64,000 nucleotides of DNA from Parasitella parasitica NRRL 2501. Its lineage: Eukaryota > Fungi > Mucoromycota. How positions within the stretch are numbered: position 1 is the stretch's first letter; each line of letters begins with the position of its first letter. The notes below the pieces were generated by a model. The model was not told where the DNA came from and ran no database searches. It was given only the letters and a program-made list of their open reading frames with translations. The stretch lies in assembly GCA_025201805.1 (NCBI GenBank), contig MU619239.1, forward strand, positions 426,752 to 490,751, written 5' to 3'. Below are positions 6,146 to 64,000 of this stretch, in pieces. The translations under genes and the position numbers were made by a program.

Positions 6146-7727
6146 ATGACAGAAATTACACAACACTCTTTGCAGAGCCAAGTGATTCAAGAGGAGGTCT
6201 CTATAGATGAACGAAATGTAAATAGCATACTTGAGGAAGAAGATATCACAGAAGCAACTTCTAGCAATTTGAATCGCACTCCCTCACCACCAAGAGATAA
6301 ACATGAAAAATTGCACCAGAATGGGGGTTCCGATTCTGAAGAAGATGTGACAGAGGAAGCTGTGCAGCGCTTTAGCTTTTGTAAACCAACAACCGGCATG
6401 GATAGTTTGAGCACGGATTCTGCCGAGAATGCAATAGAAGAGACAGATGCTGCGACTACTACATCTAACAGAGATCAAGAGCAAGACGGACATTCTCATA
6501 TACTAGCAAATGTCCATGAGCATGCAGATCCAGAACAAGCGTCATCTGACAGTCATTTAATTGGATCCACGGACACTGTCAATAGTGCTACCATGTCAAC
6601 TGCGCCTACTACTGCCGCCAATACTGCTGCATCGACTGATAGCAACGTTAACAGCAACAGCAACAGTAACCCTACCAACAGTAACCCTACCAACAGTAAC
6701 CCTACCAACAGTAACCCTACCAACAGTAACAGTAACCATAGCAACAGTAGCAGTAACCATAGCAACAGTAGCAGTAACCATAGCAACAGTAACATAGCAT
6801 ACACCACTCAAAACTCACCTCCCTCTATAAGAGGTCGAAGCGCAAGCAGCGCAAGTCCTACCACGCTAAATGGTAGCCTTTTACCTCGTTCACAAAGAGT
6901 TTGGGAGATGGATAGGCAAGCACCTGAATGTCGACGTTGTCACAGACGTTTTAATTTCCTAATTAGAAGACATCATTGCCGGTAAAATGTGCTGCGTAAT
7001 ATGAAAGCTCAAATAACTGACACCATACCTTACCATACCTTACCATAGTCGCTGTGGACAGATTGTATGCGATAAATGCAGCTCAAATAGAATTCGTTTA
7101 CCTGTAGAAGAATTGATCGAAGACCCCATAGTGTCACCCTCCCAATACCCACTACTAGCCTCACAATCTCAGCGAGTCTGTGACACTTGTTATCGAGAGC
7201 CGATACGCCGCTCATCCGAATCACACCAACGAAGAGGTCATCGATCTACTCGACCCATGGGATTTGGATCGCAAATGAGACGCACAGATAGTAATCAGAG
7301 TCTAATGATAGATTGCCCAGTGTGTGGCACTACTTTTTTGGGAATGCAGAAAAATGAGCAGGAGGAACATCTACAACGATGCTTAAATGTAGGCAGTCCG
7401 CCTGTGCAATCACCACGCTATATTGGTAAGTGTTCAGTAGTGCGTATTAAGCGTAACAGGAATCAACGACTAATTTTATCTCAGTATACCAATTGTCACA
7501 GGACTCAACACAAATAGGCGATGAATGTCCCATTTGCTTTGAAGAGTTTGAACAAGGTAAGTTGGACTCAGTACTACCTTGTTTTCTTATGCTGACCAAA
7601 TGAATGGATGTTAGGCGATAAAATATCAAGAATGATCTGTTTGTGTTCGTATCATCAACAGTGCTTGGGCTCATGGCTGCAGAAAGGGAAAGGCTGTCCA
7701 GTACACTATGATTTCCTCCAAATTTAA
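6146..7727 (+). CDS. PIB1: FYVE + C-terminal RING E3 ligase (Pib1-like)
   Basis: WEMD..CRRC..FNFLIRRHHCR|RCGQIVCDKCS..RVCDTC FYVE domain; spliced C-terminal ECPICFEEFEQG..RMICLCSYHQQC..W...GCPVH RING. Confidence 0.88.
6655..6793 (+). repeat. Coding tandem repeats: 15-bp (SNPTN)x4 then ~21-bp (SNHSNSS)x3
   Basis: agtaaccctaccaac x4 and agtaaccatagcaacagt(agc) x3 seen directly. Confidence 0.9.
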
Positions 7728-7844
7728 TTGATTTAAATTTTTTGTAAAATCTCTTTTTCCCTTATGTATGCTAAATATACACACTCATATTCTTGTTACT
7801 CATAGCTACGAACAACGCAAAATAAAATCTATAGCTCTATTGGA

Positions 7845-8740: not shown

Positions 8741-9133
8741 TGTATGTGATATAAAAATATAAGAATGTAATAAAGACTTAGTTTACCAGATACAAAACTA
8801 TTGATTTATTGATTGACAAGAAGCTGTCTATTTATATTAGAATAAATCTATCTAAATCAATCTATAAAATACAATCAGGTCATGCTCGACATTTAATTGT
8901 CAAACAAGATTATAACACAGTAGTAGTCAGAGCAAGACCTATTTCTATATTTAATCAGCTAATCGTTATGAATGTGAATCATTCATCGATAAGTTGAGCT
9001 CCGCAATTTAGAATAAGAAGAACCCAAATAGATGGTTTCTTATACAAGACATTCTATTGAATACTTCTATTTACTAGATAGAATAATCGATGCCATTTAA
9101 CCTTAGATACGATCAGGAACGGTTGCCATGACA
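8741..9133 (-). mobile_element. Possible solo LTR (copy 1 of a diverged direct repeat)
   Basis: Bounded by TGT(A)TG...CATGACA; tataaatag and aataaa on the minus strand; shares blocks such as accagatacaaaact, tctatttata, tgtcaaac and agacctat with 9331-9545; no TSD seen. Confidence 0.45.
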
Positions 9134-13942: not shown

Positions 13943-16125
13943 ATGACGAATAAACGAAACCATTCTGCTCCTCGTTCAATGGATGAGCAAGTTAACAGCC
14001 AGGATACGAATCATTCAGATATGAATATTAGCCATTCTTCTTGGTTGTATAGACTGACAACGGTACCGAATTCGAGCACAACAAAGCTAAATGACAGTGA
14101 AAAAGAACCTCAGACAGATGGAATGCTAGATAAAGTTGAAAATGATGCAAACATTATTGTCGAAAAAAATCATGAACAGCCACAACAAGAAGAAAATGCT
14201 CCCAATTATCCCGGCATTGGTATTTGGTCATGGTTGGGCTATCCAAGTTCTCAAGCAGCTACTTGCACTTCCGTTCCTGAATCAGAACCAGCGTCTGCAC
14301 CTGTTCCAAACGATGATGTGAATACAGCGAACCAAGAATCAACAACGAACGCTCATCAGATGAGCGATGTTACAGTTACACCCAAGCAATCCATTTATCA
14401 TCAGACCCGTAATTCATCTACTGCTTCCACTAAACAATCCTATTGGAAATCATTGTTTACATCGAAAGAGGATACCAATAACAATCAGCAAGATTCTGTC
14501 ATAATCCTTGACAAGGATGATCCTACAGAGCCAGATATACCCGCAACGGAAAACGCTGCAGAAGGAGAGCAACGGCGACGAAAACAGCCAGTCGCGCCAT
14601 CTCGGCATAATGTTGTTTTACCAACGTTCAAAGCCCAGTTTAGCAAAGCAACTGTTCCGCTCCATCATTCAAGCCCTTCCATATTTTCTAAAGCAATCAA
14701 TGCTATTAATTCAGTTATTTTTCCACGGAGCCCTCCGTCAGCCATTGATGATGAGTGGCACTATATCAATCGGCTGTCAACTGTACTGGATTCACTAAAG
14801 GTAAACATCTCAAATAAGCGAATAATTATCGTAGGAGTGCATGGATGGTTTCCAATGAAGGTTCGTATCAACATAAGTTATATGAACACAGTATAATATG
14901 CAATGGTAACTTTTGTATATAAAGCTTGTTCGAAGCATGATGGGAGAACCGACGGGCACCTCTATCAAGTTTTGTGAGCAGATGACAATGGCAGTAAAGC
15001 AATACTTTGAAAATACACATGGAATCACAATACCAGACGAATCTATAGTCAGTATCCCTTTGCAGTGGGAAGGGAAAGTGCTTGAAAGAGTAGAAAAATT
15101 GTACAGCATTATTGAATCAGATTATAAAAACGTGATAGAAGAAGCTGACATTGTTCTGTGGGCAACTCATTCGCAAGGAACTCCTGTTTCTGCCATTTTG
15201 TTGCAAAAATTGATCCAAGAGAGCATTATCAAAGCCGATAGACAACCTATTTGCTTGCTTGCAATGGCTGGAATATCACATGGACCGTTTCCGTCCCTAA
15301 AAGGAAGCCTATTTGTAAAGGTAGAAAAATGTACACGCAGCAAGAAAAATACAGAATAGCAAGACTAAAAGATTCAATCTGTAGTACTTTGAAGCGGATG
15401 CAGCTAGGGAGCTATTTGAATTCATGAACTCTGATTCAGATATATCAATACAATACAGAGAAGCCATGGCATATATCTTGCAAAACAAGGTAAAGACTGT
15501 ACTAGTTGGTTCAATGCAAGATCAGGTTGTCCCGCTGTATTCTGCCATCATGTCTGGTATCAGCCATCCCAATATTTTACGGGCAGTATACATTGACGGC
15601 CATATCTACACCAAAGACGACTTTTTGATCCGTCTGATTACGTTTGCGCTTCGATTGCTTAACGTAGGCTTATCAGATCATGGATTTCTCATACATATCA
15701 GTGAAGTTCTTGCGGGGAACATCTACGCTTGGGAAGGCGGCCACTCCACAGTGTACGAAGAGTTAGATGTATTTATGCTGCCATTGCAATACCTGTTTGA
15801 AACGAAACCCGTCGGTCAATTGGAAATCCTAAAACCAGCATCTCTCATATCTCAAAAGCTAAGCAACTCCAGCGACAAAGCAAAGCAAAAGGTATTGGAT
15901 ACAGTAAAGGCTAGATTGGATCCTTTTCAAGCTAAACTGCGACTTAATCCTTTCCATCTTCCATGGGCAATGAGGGGCATATGGGATGACCCTAGAATTC
16001 TGGATGATGATACGCTAAGTAGCGAGTTGGACAGGCTGCAGGAACTGTTTGATAGATGGAACCCTACAAGCGCTAGATTGAAGGAAATCAAGTTTAGATT
16101 GGAGCCGTTGAAGGCGAGGTTGTAG
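13943..16125 (+). CDS. YML020W-like conserved fungal alpha/beta-hydrolase-fold protein
   Basis: IIIVGVHGWFP..GEPTGTSIKF..ATHSQGTPVS..MAGISHGPF..DQVVPLYS..GGHS motifs; 2 introns. Confidence 0.85.
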
Positions 16126-61337: not shown

Positions 61338-61410
61338 AGCCCAACGGGGGGGTCGAACCCCCAACCTTGAGATTAAGAGTCTCACGCTCTACCGATTGAG
61401 CTAGCTAGGC
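61338..61410 (-). tRNA. tRNA-Lys, anticodon CTT, no intron
   Basis: GCCTAGCTAGCTCAATCGGTAGAGCGTGAGACT-CTT-AATCTCAAGGTTGGGGGTTCGACCCCCCCGTTGGGC folds into a cloverleaf with A and B boxes. Confidence 0.96.
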
Positions 61411-61725
61411 ATTCTCTTAGTATAGCAACCTATGATCATATCGATTAATGCATTAGATACTATTAATAAAAATTCAATCTTAAACTGAGCTAGCTAGGCG
61501 GCATCTCTTTCGTTTTTTCATCACTTTTTTCCTCACTTTTCGGTTAAAAGTTTTACTCTCCTACAAAAAACGAATTTTCTCAACCGTCAGCAACGCAATC
61601 AACTCGAAATTATACCAATATACTTGCCTTTAGTGATAGTCTATTGTGTTATAATTTCAGTATCGTCGAACACCTGCCTCATATTTTTTTTAGATTTTAA
61701 AAATTTATAAAAAATATACACCGCC

Positions 61726-62679
61726 ATGGACAATCCACTACAGCATTTGGACATGAATCAGTTTCCTTTGGTACTGCAACAACTTCAACAACAACTTACT
61801 TTAGTCACAGAGAAAGTTAATCAACATGATGAGCTGCTCACACGTTTATCTGTTCTTGAGCAAGAAAATAAGGAACTGAAAAAATTTTTACACGACAAGG
61901 AGCTTATAATTGAAAAACTCCAGGCTCAAATTCCAAGTCACGAAAATTCTTCCGCTTCGGGTCGAACCGAGGGGGGGAATAATCTCAACACTCAAGGCTC
62001 TCCCAAGCCTAACAATACTGTACCAAACTATAGTACCGTTGCTTCTGCTGCTGCTCACAAGCCAGATCCCCTTGCTACTGCAAACAAGAAGGGTAAAAAG
62101 CGCCTGGCTGCTGGTCGTGTCTTTCGAACTCCTGCTACCAAAGGTCCTCAAGGCTATGAATATGTTTATATTGGTAGATCTCGTAAGATCCAACGTTCTG
62201 AAGTTAGAAAAATTCTCAGAGACTCTGGTGTTGACTTGGGTCGTGTCTTGGATATCTGTTTTCCTGCATCTGAGGTTATCGGCATTCTGTTACACACCCA
62301 GTATGTACAAGATTTTACTGAACTCATGAAGGCTGCTGACGCCGAGCTTGTCTCCGGTTTTGACCCACTGGATCCTGCCAATATTGCTGACCCCAAGTAT
62401 GCCACTCTTGGTGTATCTGAGCGTTCTAGTCTGATTTTGGAATTTACTGCTACTCGCTGTCTTCAAACACTGGCTTTCCTGCGACCATTGAATGTTAGTG
62501 GTGTTGGTAAGTACTTCGTCGAGCAAGGCTGGATCTGTGAAGAAGACCTTTCTGTCTCTGTTGCGGCAGCTGTCAAGCGCTTTGCTGTCAAGGAGCCCAA
62601 GCGGGCTAAATTTCTGTTCCGTCGTCAACTGTCTAGCGACTCTGACTCTGAGGATAATGGCTCTGTTATGGAACAATAA
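61726..62679 (+). CDS. LINE ORF1 (coiled coil + RRM-like region)
   Basis: N-terminal heptad coiled coil; GYEYVYI..RVLDICFP..IGILLHTQY..FDPLDP; directly precedes ORF2. Confidence 0.8.
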   Translation: MDNPLQHLDMNQFPLVLQQLQQQLTLVTEKVNQHDELLTRLSVLEQENKELKKFLHDKELIIEKLQAQIPSHENSSASGRTEGGNNLNTQGSPKPNNTVPNYSTVASAAAHKPDPLATANKKGKKRLAAGRVFRTPATKGPQGYEYVYIGRSRKIQRSEVRKILRDSGVDLGRVLDICFPASEVIGILLHTQYVQDFTELMKAADAELVSGFDPLDPANIADPKYATLGVSERSSLILEFTATRCLQTLAFLRPLNVSGVGKYFVEQGWICEEDLSVSVAAAVKRFAVKEPKRAKFLFRRQLSSDSDSEDNGSVMEQ

Positions 62680-64000
62680 TGTGTTCCATGCCTGCACCTC
62701 CGTTACTGTCTAATATTTATGTCAACCCAGTCCGCTCCTTGTTTGTCTCTCTTTCCCTCTGGAATGCTAACGGTCTTCGCCAATCAGTAATTCATGATGT
62801 TCTCTCTCATGCTCTTAATACTCATGTGCTACTGGTTACAGAAACCTGGCTTACCTCTGGCTCTTTCCCCACCAGCTGGTCTCAATTTCATCTCTATGGT
62901 ACAAAAGTTCCTGGTGCATTTAATCGAGGTTCTGGTGGTATTACTGCTTTTGTCTCTCCTTCCTGTCCTTATAATGTCTCCCAACTCCCGTCATACAATC
63001 CGCACACTCTGTCCCTAAAGGTTGGCACCCTTACGGTCCATTGTGTATACTTACCTCCACCCCTATCATCTGATAAGGTGCTCTCAATCCTCAGTTCTTT
63101 GCCTATGGCTCAGGATACTATTCTGTGTGGTGATTTTAATGCTAGATTGGGCTCTCTAACTGGTGATACTATTGCTAATGCTCGTGGTAATGCTCTAAAG
63201 CCTTGGCTTGAAGAGTATAATTTCTGTGTTCTGAATACGTCTTTGGCTTTTGGTGTTCGAACCTTCTCATCCTTTCGGCGTCAACAGGAACTGAGCAGTA
63301 TTATTGATCTATTTCTGACAAACATTGGTGACTCTGGTATGCTGAATCCTCAAATGGTAGTTGAGTCTAATCTGTCTCTTGGTTCTGATCATCGGTTGAT
63401 GCTACTTACTTTCGAATATGTACCACCTCCCGATGATACTGTGGTCCCTGGTGATTCTGGTTTGGCTCCCAGGCGTCAGTGGAAGCTCTCGAAATTGACG
63501 AAAGAGAAGCCTTTGGGCTTACTCCGTGAATCCTTTCGATCTTCAGTGTCTCCTCTGGTTGGTACGCTGTCTGGTTTGGTGTATGGTTCTCCTGGTGTTC
63601 GTCCTGATATTGATGCACTCAACGATTCTTTGAATCAATGTTTGTATGAATCTCTGGATAGCTCTATTGGTGTAAAAACTAGTCGTCCTGGTCATTGGAA
63701 GAAGTACTGGACCCAAGAAATTCAAGATGCTGCCACCTCTCGCGATCGCCTATACAGTCAATGGCGACATTCCTTTGGGATTGTCAAAGTAGATAAGTGG
63801 GTCTTGTATAAGAATGCTCATCGAAAGTTTAGATCTTTGATTCAAGCTGCTAAGCGCAGGTCGTGGAAACAGTTTTGTGGTGCACTAGAACGTGATTTTT
63901 CAAAGGCTACTGCGGCTATCAAGCGCATCAAACGAAACAAAGAATCTTCTGCTACTTACTGTCACCCTGATGGACCTGCTGCTTCTGTTGCTGCTATGGG
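62679..64000 (+). CDS. LINE ORF2, APE endonuclease (RT expected beyond the window)
   Basis: Open from ATG 62679 to the window end: SLWNANGL, VTETW, VYLPP, CGDFNAR, SIIDL, GSDH, KYWT; absent from the ORF track, presumably because it has no stop in the window. Confidence 0.92.
   Translation, partial: MCSMPAPPLLSNIYVNPVRSLFVSLSLWNANGLRQSVIHDVLSHALNTHVLLVTETWLTSGSFPTSWSQFHLYGTKVPGAFNRGSGGITAFVSPSCPYNVSQLPSYNPHTLSLKVGTLTVHCVYLPPPLSSDKVLSILSSLPMAQDTILCGDFNARLGSLTGDTIANARGNALKPWLEEYNFCVLNTSLAFGVRTFSSFRRQQELSSIIDLFLTNIGDSGMLNPQMVVESNLSLGSDHRLMLLTFEYVPPPDDTVVPGDSGLAPRRQWKLSKLTKEKPLGLLRESFRSSVSPLVGTLSGLVYGSPGVRPDIDALNDSLNQCLYESLDSSIGVKTSRPGHWKKYWTQEIQDAATSRDRLYSQWRHSFGIVKVDKWVLYKNAHRKFRSLIQAAKRRSWKQFCGALERDFSKATAAIKRIKRNKESSATYCHPDGPAASVAAM

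What the first reader, a model, noticed from the sequence alone, without database searches (positions are those of the whole stretch)
61338..61730. Candidate tRNA-gene-targeted LINE whose 5' boundary carries a copy of the tRNA 5' end
Seen: an intact-looking LINE begins about 90 bp upstream of tRNA-Lys(CTT), head-to-head. The 14-mer TGAGCTAGCTAGGC (antisense of tRNA nt 1-14) occurs in the tRNA (61397-61410) and again at 61486-61499, where the LINE's pyrimidine-rich leader appears to start. The second copy continues CTCAG rather than CTCAA, which may point to a different Lys isodecoder rather than a simple TSD. Known: Dictyostelium TRE5 LINEs insert head-to-head upstream of tRNA genes, and some Tx1-clade LINEs target tRNA arrays. 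Inference: a Mucorales LINE family uses Pol III genes as safe harbours, and its RNA may carry a tRNA-derived 5' segment (transduced from a donor site or used as an annealing arm). I know of no described case in Mucoromycota.
Basis: partly seen in the sequence, partly recalled or inferred. Interest (0 to 1): 0.8.

Follow-up and report, generated by a model that had tools for sequence, protein, structure and literature searches.

The report
tRNA-targeting LINE, stacked twice
The repeated 14 bases are the footprint of a second, stunted copy of a jumping gene family that cuts tRNA genes at one fixed base in Mucor-type moulds and rebuilds the gene as it inserts, so the same gene can be hit again.

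Summary
The 14-mer lies at 61397-61410, inside tRNA-Lys(CTT), and again at 61486-61499. An open APE-type LINE starts at 61503, head-to-head with the tRNA.

The second 14-mer is not part of the LINE's RNA. It is a target-site duplication. The 75 bases between the two copies (61411-61485) are the 3' tail of a second, 5'-truncated LINE.

In this genome (Parasitella parasitica), 22 of 23 LINE 5' ends sit flush against tRNA base 1. All 11 copies of that 3' tail are followed by an antisense copy of bases 1-14 of a tRNA.

In every locus where both an intact tRNA and such a stub are visible, the stub matches that tRNA. This holds in Parasitella, two Mucor species and Helicostylum. Stub-separated arrays also occur in M. 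circinelloides, two Rhizopus species and Umbelopsis.

The inferred mechanism: the tRNA-sense strand is nicked after base 14, in box A, and the other strand at -1/+1. The 14-bp duplication rebuilds an intact gene, which allows tandem arrays.

The "tRNA-derived 5' segment" and "other isodecoder" ideas are not.

I found no published description in fungi. The scan's own notes on other pieces of this genome reach the same reading.

The parts
61338..61410 (-). Intact tRNA-Lys(CTT) gene, the regenerated target. Its bases 1-14 are window 61410 down to 61397.
   Evidence: ARAGORN. Rfam RF00005 at 65.5 bits. A T-run follows the 3' end on the sense strand.
61411..61485 (+). A 5'-truncated LINE copy: only the last 75 bases of the 3' UTR, ending ...CTTAAAC, flush against tRNA base 1.
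   Evidence: 61411-61492 is 98-100% identical to the end of a longer repeat at C222, C131, C11, C23, C162, C340, C173 and C154. There it is preceded by further LINE 3' UTR and the ORF2 C-terminus. Loose ends before 61411 in public contigs read that 3' UTR.
61486..61499 (+). 14-nt target-site duplication ('stub'): the antisense of tRNA-Lys bases 1-14, made by one of the two stacked insertions.
   Evidence: Identical to 61397-61410. All 11 copies of this LINE tail are followed by TGAGC(T/C)A plus the 7-nt acceptor arm of a tRNA. Wherever the neighbouring tRNA is visible, it is that tRNA's.
61500..61502 (+). Three extra bases (GGC) at the 5' junction of the full-length LINE.
   Evidence: Five other tRNA-Lys loci in this genome have the LINE start ATCTC.../ATTTC... 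directly after tRNA base 1, or with one extra base. Only the window has GGC. Their origin is inferred: 5'-junction filler.
61503..61725 (+). 5' UTR of the full-length LINE; it starts ATCTCTTTCG.
   Evidence: The same start is shared by 22 of 23 distinct 5' ends in this genome and by Mucor copies.
61726..62679 (+). ORF1, 317 aa: a long N-terminal helix, a disordered linker, a small alpha/beta domain and a helical C-terminal domain.
   Evidence: ORF list. No Pfam hit. 77 homologues, nearly all in Mucorales. AlphaFold model with mean pLDDT 77. Only weak RRM-like structural matches, Z about 6.
62679..64000 (+). ORF2, first 440 codons, containing the AP endonuclease; cut off by the contig end.
   Evidence: PF14529 at 5.6e-12 and PF03372 at 4.8e-8. 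80% aa identity to the C128 copy, whose ORF2 frame is 1123 aa. The Mucor velutinosus relative has APE plus RVT_1 in 1119 aa.

Best explanation
The window holds two stacked insertions of a tRNA-gene-specific, APE-type LINE family at one tRNA-Lys(CTT) gene.

Inferred from the junctions: the element nicks the tRNA-sense strand inside box A, after base 14 (T-R-G-C-T-C-A^). The freed 3'-OH primes reverse transcription of LINE RNA, which ends ...AAC. The opposite strand is cut exactly between -1 and +1, and fill-in duplicates bases 1-14.

The result is: upstream flank, 14-nt stub, LINE in antisense, then a complete tRNA gene. The LINE's 5' end therefore lies flush and head-to-head with tRNA base 1, and the gene survives.

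Because the gene is rebuilt, it can be hit again, which gives head-to-tail arrays separated by identical stubs.

In the window, one insertion is the full-length element (61503 onward). The other died after 75 bases (61411-61485). The 14-mer at 61486-61499 is the stub between them.

Shown: the anatomy, the junction rule, and its recurrence across copies, tRNA species and genera. Inferred: the nick positions, the order of the two events, and how the target is recognised. I favour direct reading of box A by the endonuclease.
For: 1. The block 61411-61492 is 98-100% identical to the end of a longer LINE at eight other places.

2. All 11 copies of that tail are followed by TGAGC(T/C)A plus seven variable bases. 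In the five loci where the adjacent tRNA is visible, these bases are the antisense of that tRNA's bases 1-14, with at most one mismatch. The tRNAs are Lys-CTT, three Ile-AAT and Thr-AGT. At tRNA-Thr the stub reads TGAGCCA, like the Thr gene. The box-A part therefore comes from the target, not from the LINE.

3. 22 of 23 distinct LINE 5' ends start right after tRNA base 1. Ten abut real genes (Lys-CTT, Lys-TTT, Phe, Met, Thr) and twelve abut stubs preceded by a LINE tail. Five tRNA-Lys paralogues show the un-nested state, without the 92-nt block.

4. The sister copy on C269 is 99% identical but carries an Ala-type stub.

5. Both junctions of a single clean insertion are visible in Helicostylum pulchrum. 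The order there is tRNA-Ala, a 5.4-kb LINE, the stub, then unique flank.

6. Mucor velutinosus has five tandem inserts at one tRNA-Phe, each closed by the same stub. Arrays with stubs also occur in M. lusitanicus, M. circinelloides, Rhizopus delemar, R. stolonifer (period 4859 bp) and Umbelopsis isabellina.

7. Where the tRNA's base 15 is not G (Lys, Ala), the base before the stub is still the LINE's C. The duplication is therefore 14 bp.

8. Public contigs that end before 61500-61502 continue into Thr-, Phe- and Ala-type tRNA ends.
Against: The 3' end of the window's full-length copy lies beyond the contig end, so its own stub is not seen. No empty-site allele was recovered, because Logan contigs break at the repeats.

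The order of the two insertions is not fixed by the structure. An insertion into the stub itself would give the same picture.

The nick positions are read from junctions, not measured. For tRNAs with G15-T16-T17 the duplication could be read as 15-17 bp.

Single copies examined in Absidia and Lichtheimia are not next to a called tRNA.

My sample of targets was gathered by similarity to this subfamily, so the target range is not complete.
Confidence: 0.9

Rival explanations
1. One reading: the 14-mer belongs to the LINE itself. It would be a tRNA-derived 5' segment, either transduced from a donor site at another Lys gene or used as an annealing arm.
For: The 14-mer lies three bases before the LINE's conserved start. 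It differs from the local tRNA at the next base.
Against: The fragment changes with the neighbouring tRNA (Lys, Ile, Thr, Phe, Ala, Met) while the LINE start stays the same. A 99%-identical sister copy has an Ala-type fragment. Five LINE copies at other tRNA-Lys genes have no fragment at all, and the gene itself occupies that place. The differing base is the last base of the intervening LINE tail.
Confidence: 0.03
2. The second 14-mer is the remnant of a decayed tandem tRNA-Lys copy that was there before any LINE arrived.
For: tRNA genes can be tandemly duplicated. The fragment is a perfect tRNA 5' end.
Against: What lies to the left of the fragment, where bases 15-73 should be, is a 100%-conserved LINE 3' tail and not tRNA-like sequence. 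No tRNA-like match was found there even at E up to 1. The same 14-nt length recurs at every junction in seven species.
Confidence: 0.02
3. Same anatomy, but a different way of finding the target. The element would be tethered to the Pol III machinery (TFIIIB/TFIIIC) on active tRNA genes, as Dictyostelium TRE5-A is, rather than reading box A DNA directly.
For: Many different tRNA species are used. The orientation is always head-to-head, as for TRE5-A. Notes from other windows of this scan report Asp and Tyr targets, whose box A differs; I did not check them.
Against: The junctions are exact to the nucleotide on both strands in every copy. Published work takes this as the mark of direct sequence recognition, whereas TRE5-A lands at a distance near the gene (PMC3706591). 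All targets in my sample share T-R-G-C-T-(C/T)-A at bases 8-14.
Confidence: 0.3

Closest known systems
Dictyostelium TRE5-A / TRE3 (tRNA-gene-targeted APE-type LINEs)
   Same: APE plus RT LINEs with two ORFs. They use tRNA genes as safe harbours in a compact genome and keep a fixed orientation relative to the gene. The target gene stays intact (PMC5006619, PMC5391098, PMC3706591).
   Different: TRE5-A lands about 48 bp upstream, at a distance set by protein contacts with the Pol III complex, and does not cut inside the gene. The Mucorales element cuts inside box A and sits at position -1 exactly, with a fixed 14-bp duplication made of tRNA sequence. RT kinship was not tested.
Sequence-specific LINEs of multicopy RNA genes (R1/R2 in rDNA; Tx1-group Keno in U2, Mutsu in 5S, Dewa in the tRNA-Leu spacer; NeSL-1_TV in tRNA-Pro, LIN15_SM/LIN25_SM in tRNA-Arg/Glu)
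   Same: Insertion at one exact nucleotide of a conserved multicopy RNA gene. They form tandem or nested arrays and many 5'-truncated copies (PMC4640811, PMC3706591, PMC4494074).
   Different: Those elements generally interrupt their target or lie in a spacer, and each uses one gene family. NeSL and LIN use a restriction-like endonuclease. Here an APE-type element uses a motif shared by many tRNA families, and its duplication restores a complete gene.
Ty3 (yeast LTR retrotransposon)
   Same: Inserts within a few bases of the Pol III start site of tRNA genes and leaves the gene intact (PMC6673722, PMC5911963).
   Different: Ty3 is an LTR element that uses integrase and TFIIIB tethering and makes a 5-bp duplication. 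There is no cut inside the coding region.
Dada DNA transposons
   Same: Insert at a fixed site inside tRNA or snRNA genes (PMC3706591, PMC8869645).
   Different: Dada is a DDE transposase element with 6-7 bp duplications, not a retroelement.
Grem-LINE1 of Mucor (pericentric LINE1-like element)
   Same: A LINE of the same host group with an APE plus RT ORF2 (10.1101/706580).
   Different: Grem-LINE1 has zinc knuckles in ORF1, a zf-RVT domain and a poly(A) signal, and it lies in pericentromeres. The present family has none of these domains. Its RT is only 24% identical to the Grem-like element on C173.

Membership tests
APE-type non-LTR retrotransposon (LINE) | ORF2 with an N-terminal AP endonuclease | tested here: met
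   PF14529 and PF03372 in window ORF2 and in relatives.
APE-type non-LTR retrotransposon (LINE) | Reverse transcriptase downstream of the endonuclease | tested here: met
   Not visible in the window because the contig ends. RVT_1 is present in the M. velutinosus relative at 2e-22. The FADD motif is present in the Parasitella C128 copy.
APE-type non-LTR retrotransposon (LINE) | Marks of target-primed reverse transcription: target-site duplication, 5' truncation, no LTRs | tested here: met
   14-bp duplications flank complete copies. Truncated copies of 75 bp to 3.4 kb share the 3' end.
Target-sequence-specific LINEs (R1/R2/Tx1-group type) | Independent copies inserted at the same nucleotide of a conserved multicopy target | tested here: met
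   22 of 23 5' ends lie at tRNA base 1. All stubs are 14 nt. The same rule holds in seven other species.
Target-sequence-specific LINEs (R1/R2/Tx1-group type) | The endonuclease itself recognises the target DNA | not testable with these tools
   Needs an in vitro nicking assay.
Dictyostelium TRE5 family | Insertion about 48 bp upstream of tRNA genes, outside the coding region | tested here: not met
   The distance is 0 and the cut lies inside the gene after base 14.
Dictyostelium TRE5 family | RT groups with TRE elements in a phylogeny | not tested
L1 clade | ORF1 of the L1 type (Transposase_22; coiled coil, RRM, CTD) | tested here: inconclusive
   No Pfam hit. The model has a long helix plus a small alpha/beta domain with only weak RRM-like matches (Z 6.2 to Prp24, 5.8 to GUCT) and no L1 ORF1p match.
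L1 clade | Poly(A) tail at the 3' end | tested here: not met
   The 3' ends stop at ...AAC...ACC or ...GCC directly before the stub.
L1 / Tx1 clades | RT phylogeny with labelled reference elements | not tested
   No reference set was at hand. The best solved relative is human L1 ORF2p at 1e-14, barely ahead of R2 at 7e-12.
Tad1 clade (the common fungal LINE clade) | RNase H domain after the RT | tested here: not met
   No RNase H family in the 1119-aa ORF2 or in the C-terminal 415 aa.
Grem-LINE1 | CCHC zinc knuckles in ORF1 and zf-RVT in ORF2 | tested here: not met
   Neither was found. A different element on C173 has the CCHC ORF, and its RT is 24% identical.

The most novel reading that the evidence does not exclude
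The element may create its own landing pads. The LINE's conserved last bases (...AAC, read GTT on the tRNA-sense strand) follow the 14-nt stub, so together they recreate an extended box-A look-alike (T-A-G-C-T-C-A-G-T-T). Orphan stubs could then be re-targeted without a tRNA gene behind them. Read-through LINE RNA carrying the downstream stub could also anneal to the nicked target, an 'annealing arm' at the 3' end rather than the 5' end. Arrays would then grow from any stub, and array order would not record age.
Probability: 0.2. Interest if true: 0.7.

Novelty: new variant of a known kind. Interest (0 to 1): 0.6.

Why it matters
tRNA-gene targeting by LINEs has been worked out mainly in Dictyostelium. 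There it is mediated by proteins and acts at a distance from the gene.

Here a fungal APE-type LINE lineage appears to cut inside the gene's internal promoter, yet hands back a complete gene through its own duplication. That gives nucleotide-exact, repeatable and apparently harmless integration at dozens of genomic sites.

The lineage spans Mucor, Parasitella, Helicostylum, Rhizopus and Umbelopsis. This explains why assemblies of these fungi break at tRNA-linked LINE arrays. It also warns annotators that tRNA 5' fragments next to LINEs are footprints, not pseudogenes.

Finally, it offers a natural endonuclease and RT with a short, conserved target that could be tested as a site-specific integration tool.

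Tried and rejected
- Extending the contig to see the full-length copy's 3' end failed, because the contig ends at window base 64000.
Many LINE stretches that I did fetch read N (withheld), so the Parasitella RT core was not seen directly.
- An exact-protein look-up of the window's ORF1 found nothing on record.
- The read test for an empty-site allele or a transcript start was uninformative. All runs were Logan contigs that break at the tRNA and LINE repeats, and the runs with the same species label but few shared words did not cover the unique flank.
- Clade assignment failed. PDB sequence searches with the window's APE part and the C-terminal part gave nothing. The full ORF2 hits L1 and R2 RTs almost equally. 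The ORF1 fold gave only weak RRM-like matches.
- A loose pattern search for head-to-tail junctions with other kinds of stub gave only chance matches besides the T-R-G-C-T-C-A type.
- I rejected the idea that the box-A half of the 14-mer is encoded by the LINE (a 7-bp duplication), because of the Thr-type stub.
- I rejected segmental duplication as the source of the C269 sister copy, because its stub is Ala-type.

Full report
**Observation.** The window is G000:C3:426752-490751, and the contig ends at the window's last base.
- ARAGORN and Rfam call one intact tRNA-Lys(CTT) at 61338-61410 on the minus strand.
- The 14-mer TGAGCTAGCTAGGC, the antisense of tRNA bases 1-14, occurs at 61397-61410 and 61486-61499 and nowhere else in the window. 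None of 100 shuffles gave two hits.
- From 61503 a LINE runs rightward: a 5' UTR, ORF1 (61726-62679, 317 aa), and an overlapping ORF2 that is open to the contig end and begins with an AP endonuclease.

**What lies between the two copies.** Searching the genome with the region showed that 61411-61492 is itself a repeat.
- It starts exactly one base past tRNA base 1.
- It is 98-100% identical to the end of a longer element at eight other places.
- In those places the block is preceded by more 3' UTR and by the C-terminal part of a LINE ORF2.
- The window therefore holds only the last 75 bases of a LINE (61411-61485, ending ...CTTAAAC), followed by the 14-mer.

**The junction rule in this genome.**
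- 3' ends: all 11 copies of this LINE tail are followed by TGAGC(T/C)A plus seven variable bases.
- Match to the neighbouring tRNA: in five loci an intact tRNA lies at the element's other end. These are Lys-CTT in the window, Ile-AAT on C131, C11 and C154, and Thr-AGT on C23. In each, the 14 bases are the antisense of that tRNA's bases 1-14, with at most one mismatch.
- Origin of the box-A half: at tRNA-Thr, whose box A reads TGGCTCA, the stub reads TGAGCCA. The box-A half is therefore copied from the target and not encoded by the LINE.
- What follows the stub: another LINE's 5' end in six of the 11 cases, a 5'-truncated LINE body in at least two (C23, C154), and apparently unique DNA in the rest.
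- 5' ends: of 23 distinct LINE 5' ends, 22 begin (ATCTC.../ATTTC...) directly after tRNA base 1. Ten abut real genes (Lys-CTT, Lys-TTT, Phe, Met, Thr) and twelve abut stubs preceded by a LINE tail.
- Un-nested state: an alignment of the window with five other tRNA-Lys loci shows the LINE flush with the gene. The window differs by one 92-nt block, made of the 75-nt tail, the 14-nt stub and GGC.

**Against a transduced leader.** The sister LINE on C269 is 99% identical but is preceded by an Ala-type stub (CATCCCC) and the tail of a different LINE subfamily. It is therefore an independent insertion, and the stub does not travel with the element. Public contigs whose match stops at 61500-61502 continue leftward into Thr-, Phe- and Ala-type tRNA ends. 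Those stopping at 61411 continue into LINE 3' UTR.

**Other species.** Contig lengths and protein names identify the genome as Parasitella parasitica.

| Species (locus) | What is seen |
|---|---|
| Mucor velutinosus (L073) | One tRNA-Phe carries five tandem inserts, each closed by the Phe stub (one with a mismatch): two 424-bp SINE-like units, a 4.8-kb full-length LINE with ORF1 318 aa and ORF2 1119 aa (APE + RVT_1), a truncated LINE, and a third SINE-like unit |
| Helicostylum pulchrum (L075) | A clean single insertion with both junctions: tRNA-Ala, a 5.4-kb LINE, the Ala stub, then unique flank |
| M. lusitanicus (L077) | tRNA-Ala followed by two inserts and two stubs |
| M. circinelloides (L074) | A LINE tail, an Ala stub and a LINE head |
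| Rhizopus delemar, R. stolonifer (L076, L081) | Head-to-tail LINEs separated by one 14-nt stub; period 4859 bp in R. stolonifer |
| Umbelopsis isabellina (L078) | The same layout with an Ile-like stub whose box-A part reads TAGCTTA |
| Absidia (L080) | The single copy examined is not beside a called tRNA |
| Lichtheimia ornata (L079) | The copy is flanked by a 14-15-nt duplication whose outer seven bases equal an Ala acceptor arm, but no tRNA is called there; I leave it open |

In an RT tree the tRNA-linked copies I could place fall in one clade with 95/93 support. The tree is midpoint-rooted and has 19 rows, so it is only a sketch.

**Mechanism (inferred from the junctions).**
1. In target-primed reverse transcription, the target strand that abuts the element's 3' end supplies the primer. 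Here that strand is the tRNA-sense strand ending at base 14, so the first nick lies in box A after T-R-G-C-T-C-A.
2. For Lys and Ala genes, base 15 is A, yet the base before the stub is still the LINE's C. One SINE-like copy ends in T where tRNA-Phe has C. The duplication is therefore 14 bp in those cases. For tRNAs with G15-T16-T17 it could be read as up to 17 bp, because the LINE ends in AAC.
3. The LINE's 5' end joins exactly at base 1, so the second nick is at -1/+1 on the other strand.
4. Fill-in then gives: flank, stub, LINE, complete gene.
5. The rebuilt gene explains the arrays.

The order of the two window events is not settled by structure. The usual expectation is that the full-length copy came first and the 75-nt copy then landed in the rebuilt gene. 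An insertion into the stub would look the same.

How the site is found is also open. Exactness on both strands and the shared box-A heptamer favour direct reading by the endonuclease. This is how the literature separates sequence-specific elements from TRE5-A-type tethering (PMC3706591). Tethering to the Pol III complex is not excluded.

**Comparison with known elements.**
- ORF2 has APE and RT but no RNase H and no zf-RVT. ORF1 has no zinc knuckle. This argues against Tad1-clade and Grem-LINE1 membership (10.1101/706580). A Grem-like element does exist on C173, and its RT is 24% identical.
- There is no poly(A) tail.
- ORF1 models as a long helix plus a small alpha/beta domain plus a helical domain, with only weak RRM-like matches.
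- The RT is about equally distant from human L1 ORF2p and from R2. Clade membership therefore stays untested.
- Functionally the nearest systems are TRE5-A (tRNA genes, head-to-head, but about 48 bp away), the sequence-specific LINEs of RNA genes (exact site, but gene-disrupting or in a spacer), Ty3 and Dada.

**Literature.** Full-text searches found no fungal LINE described with this behaviour. The terms covered Mucorales, Mucoromycota and Parasitella combined with LINE, non-LTR and tRNA. The Rhizopus genome paper reports only Ty3/gypsy elements near tRNA genes (PMC2699053). The library holds open-access papers only, so Repbase Reports entries could have been missed.

**Earlier notes of this scan.** I had settled the model. 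The findings index then showed that other windows of the same genome had led readers and follow-up agents to the same family and the same rebuild-by-duplication reading. They give the cut as after base 15, or the duplication as 17 nt. My Lys and Ala junctions argue for 14. Their Asp and Tyr targets, which I did not check, would widen the target range beyond the heptamer seen here.

**Limits.** I therefore did not read the Parasitella RT core, and I could not make a genome-wide tRNA tally.

**Verdict.** The tRNA-targeting inference is supported and extended. The "tRNA piece in the LINE RNA" inference is replaced by a nested target-site duplication.

Noticed in passing
L073:6904-7327, 7342-7765 and 15584-15990 (Mucor velutinosus): About 424-bp non-coding units with a tRNA-like head (box A and box B; Rfam tRNA only 22 bits) and a tail like the LINE's 3' UTR. 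They are inserted by the same rule at tRNA-Phe. They look like a SINE partner of the LINE.
   Followed up: partly
L057:5117-7603 (C23), L060:3343-5227 (C131), L056 minus strand (C11): Short elements of 1.9-2.5 kb at tRNA-Thr and tRNA-Ile. They have a LINE 5' UTR, an ORF1-like frame fused to an ORF2 C-terminal piece, and the 100%-identical 3' tail. They are internally deleted, apparently recently active derivatives. Parts of them read N.
   Followed up: partly
L061:1-4340, minus strand (C173): A second, unrelated LINE with a CCHC-knuckle ORF, APE and RT. It matches the published domain plan of Grem-LINE1 and lies downstream of the tRNA-type LINE on the same contig.
   Followed up: partly
L079:3839-3853 and 9107-9121 (Lichtheimia ornata): A related LINE flanked by a 15-nt direct repeat (CACAAAACCATCCCC). 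Its outer seven bases equal the antisense of an Ala-type acceptor arm, yet neither ARAGORN nor Rfam calls a tRNA beside it. It could be a decayed target or a different target.
   Followed up: partly
window 61500-61502: Three extra bases (GGC) at the full-length LINE's 5' junction repeat the last three bases of the stub. Other copies have zero or one extra base.
   Followed up: partly
window 61411-61802, run X7 record 25: A 1.2-kb contig from a run guessed to be RNA spans a LINE tail, a stub and the next LINE's 5' UTR of a related copy. It could be a read-through transcript across an array, or simply DNA.
   Followed up: no
L055:5192-6418, minus strand (C222): A Retrotrans_gag ORF, so an LTR-type element, lies within a few kb of a tRNA-type LINE array.
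   Followed up: no
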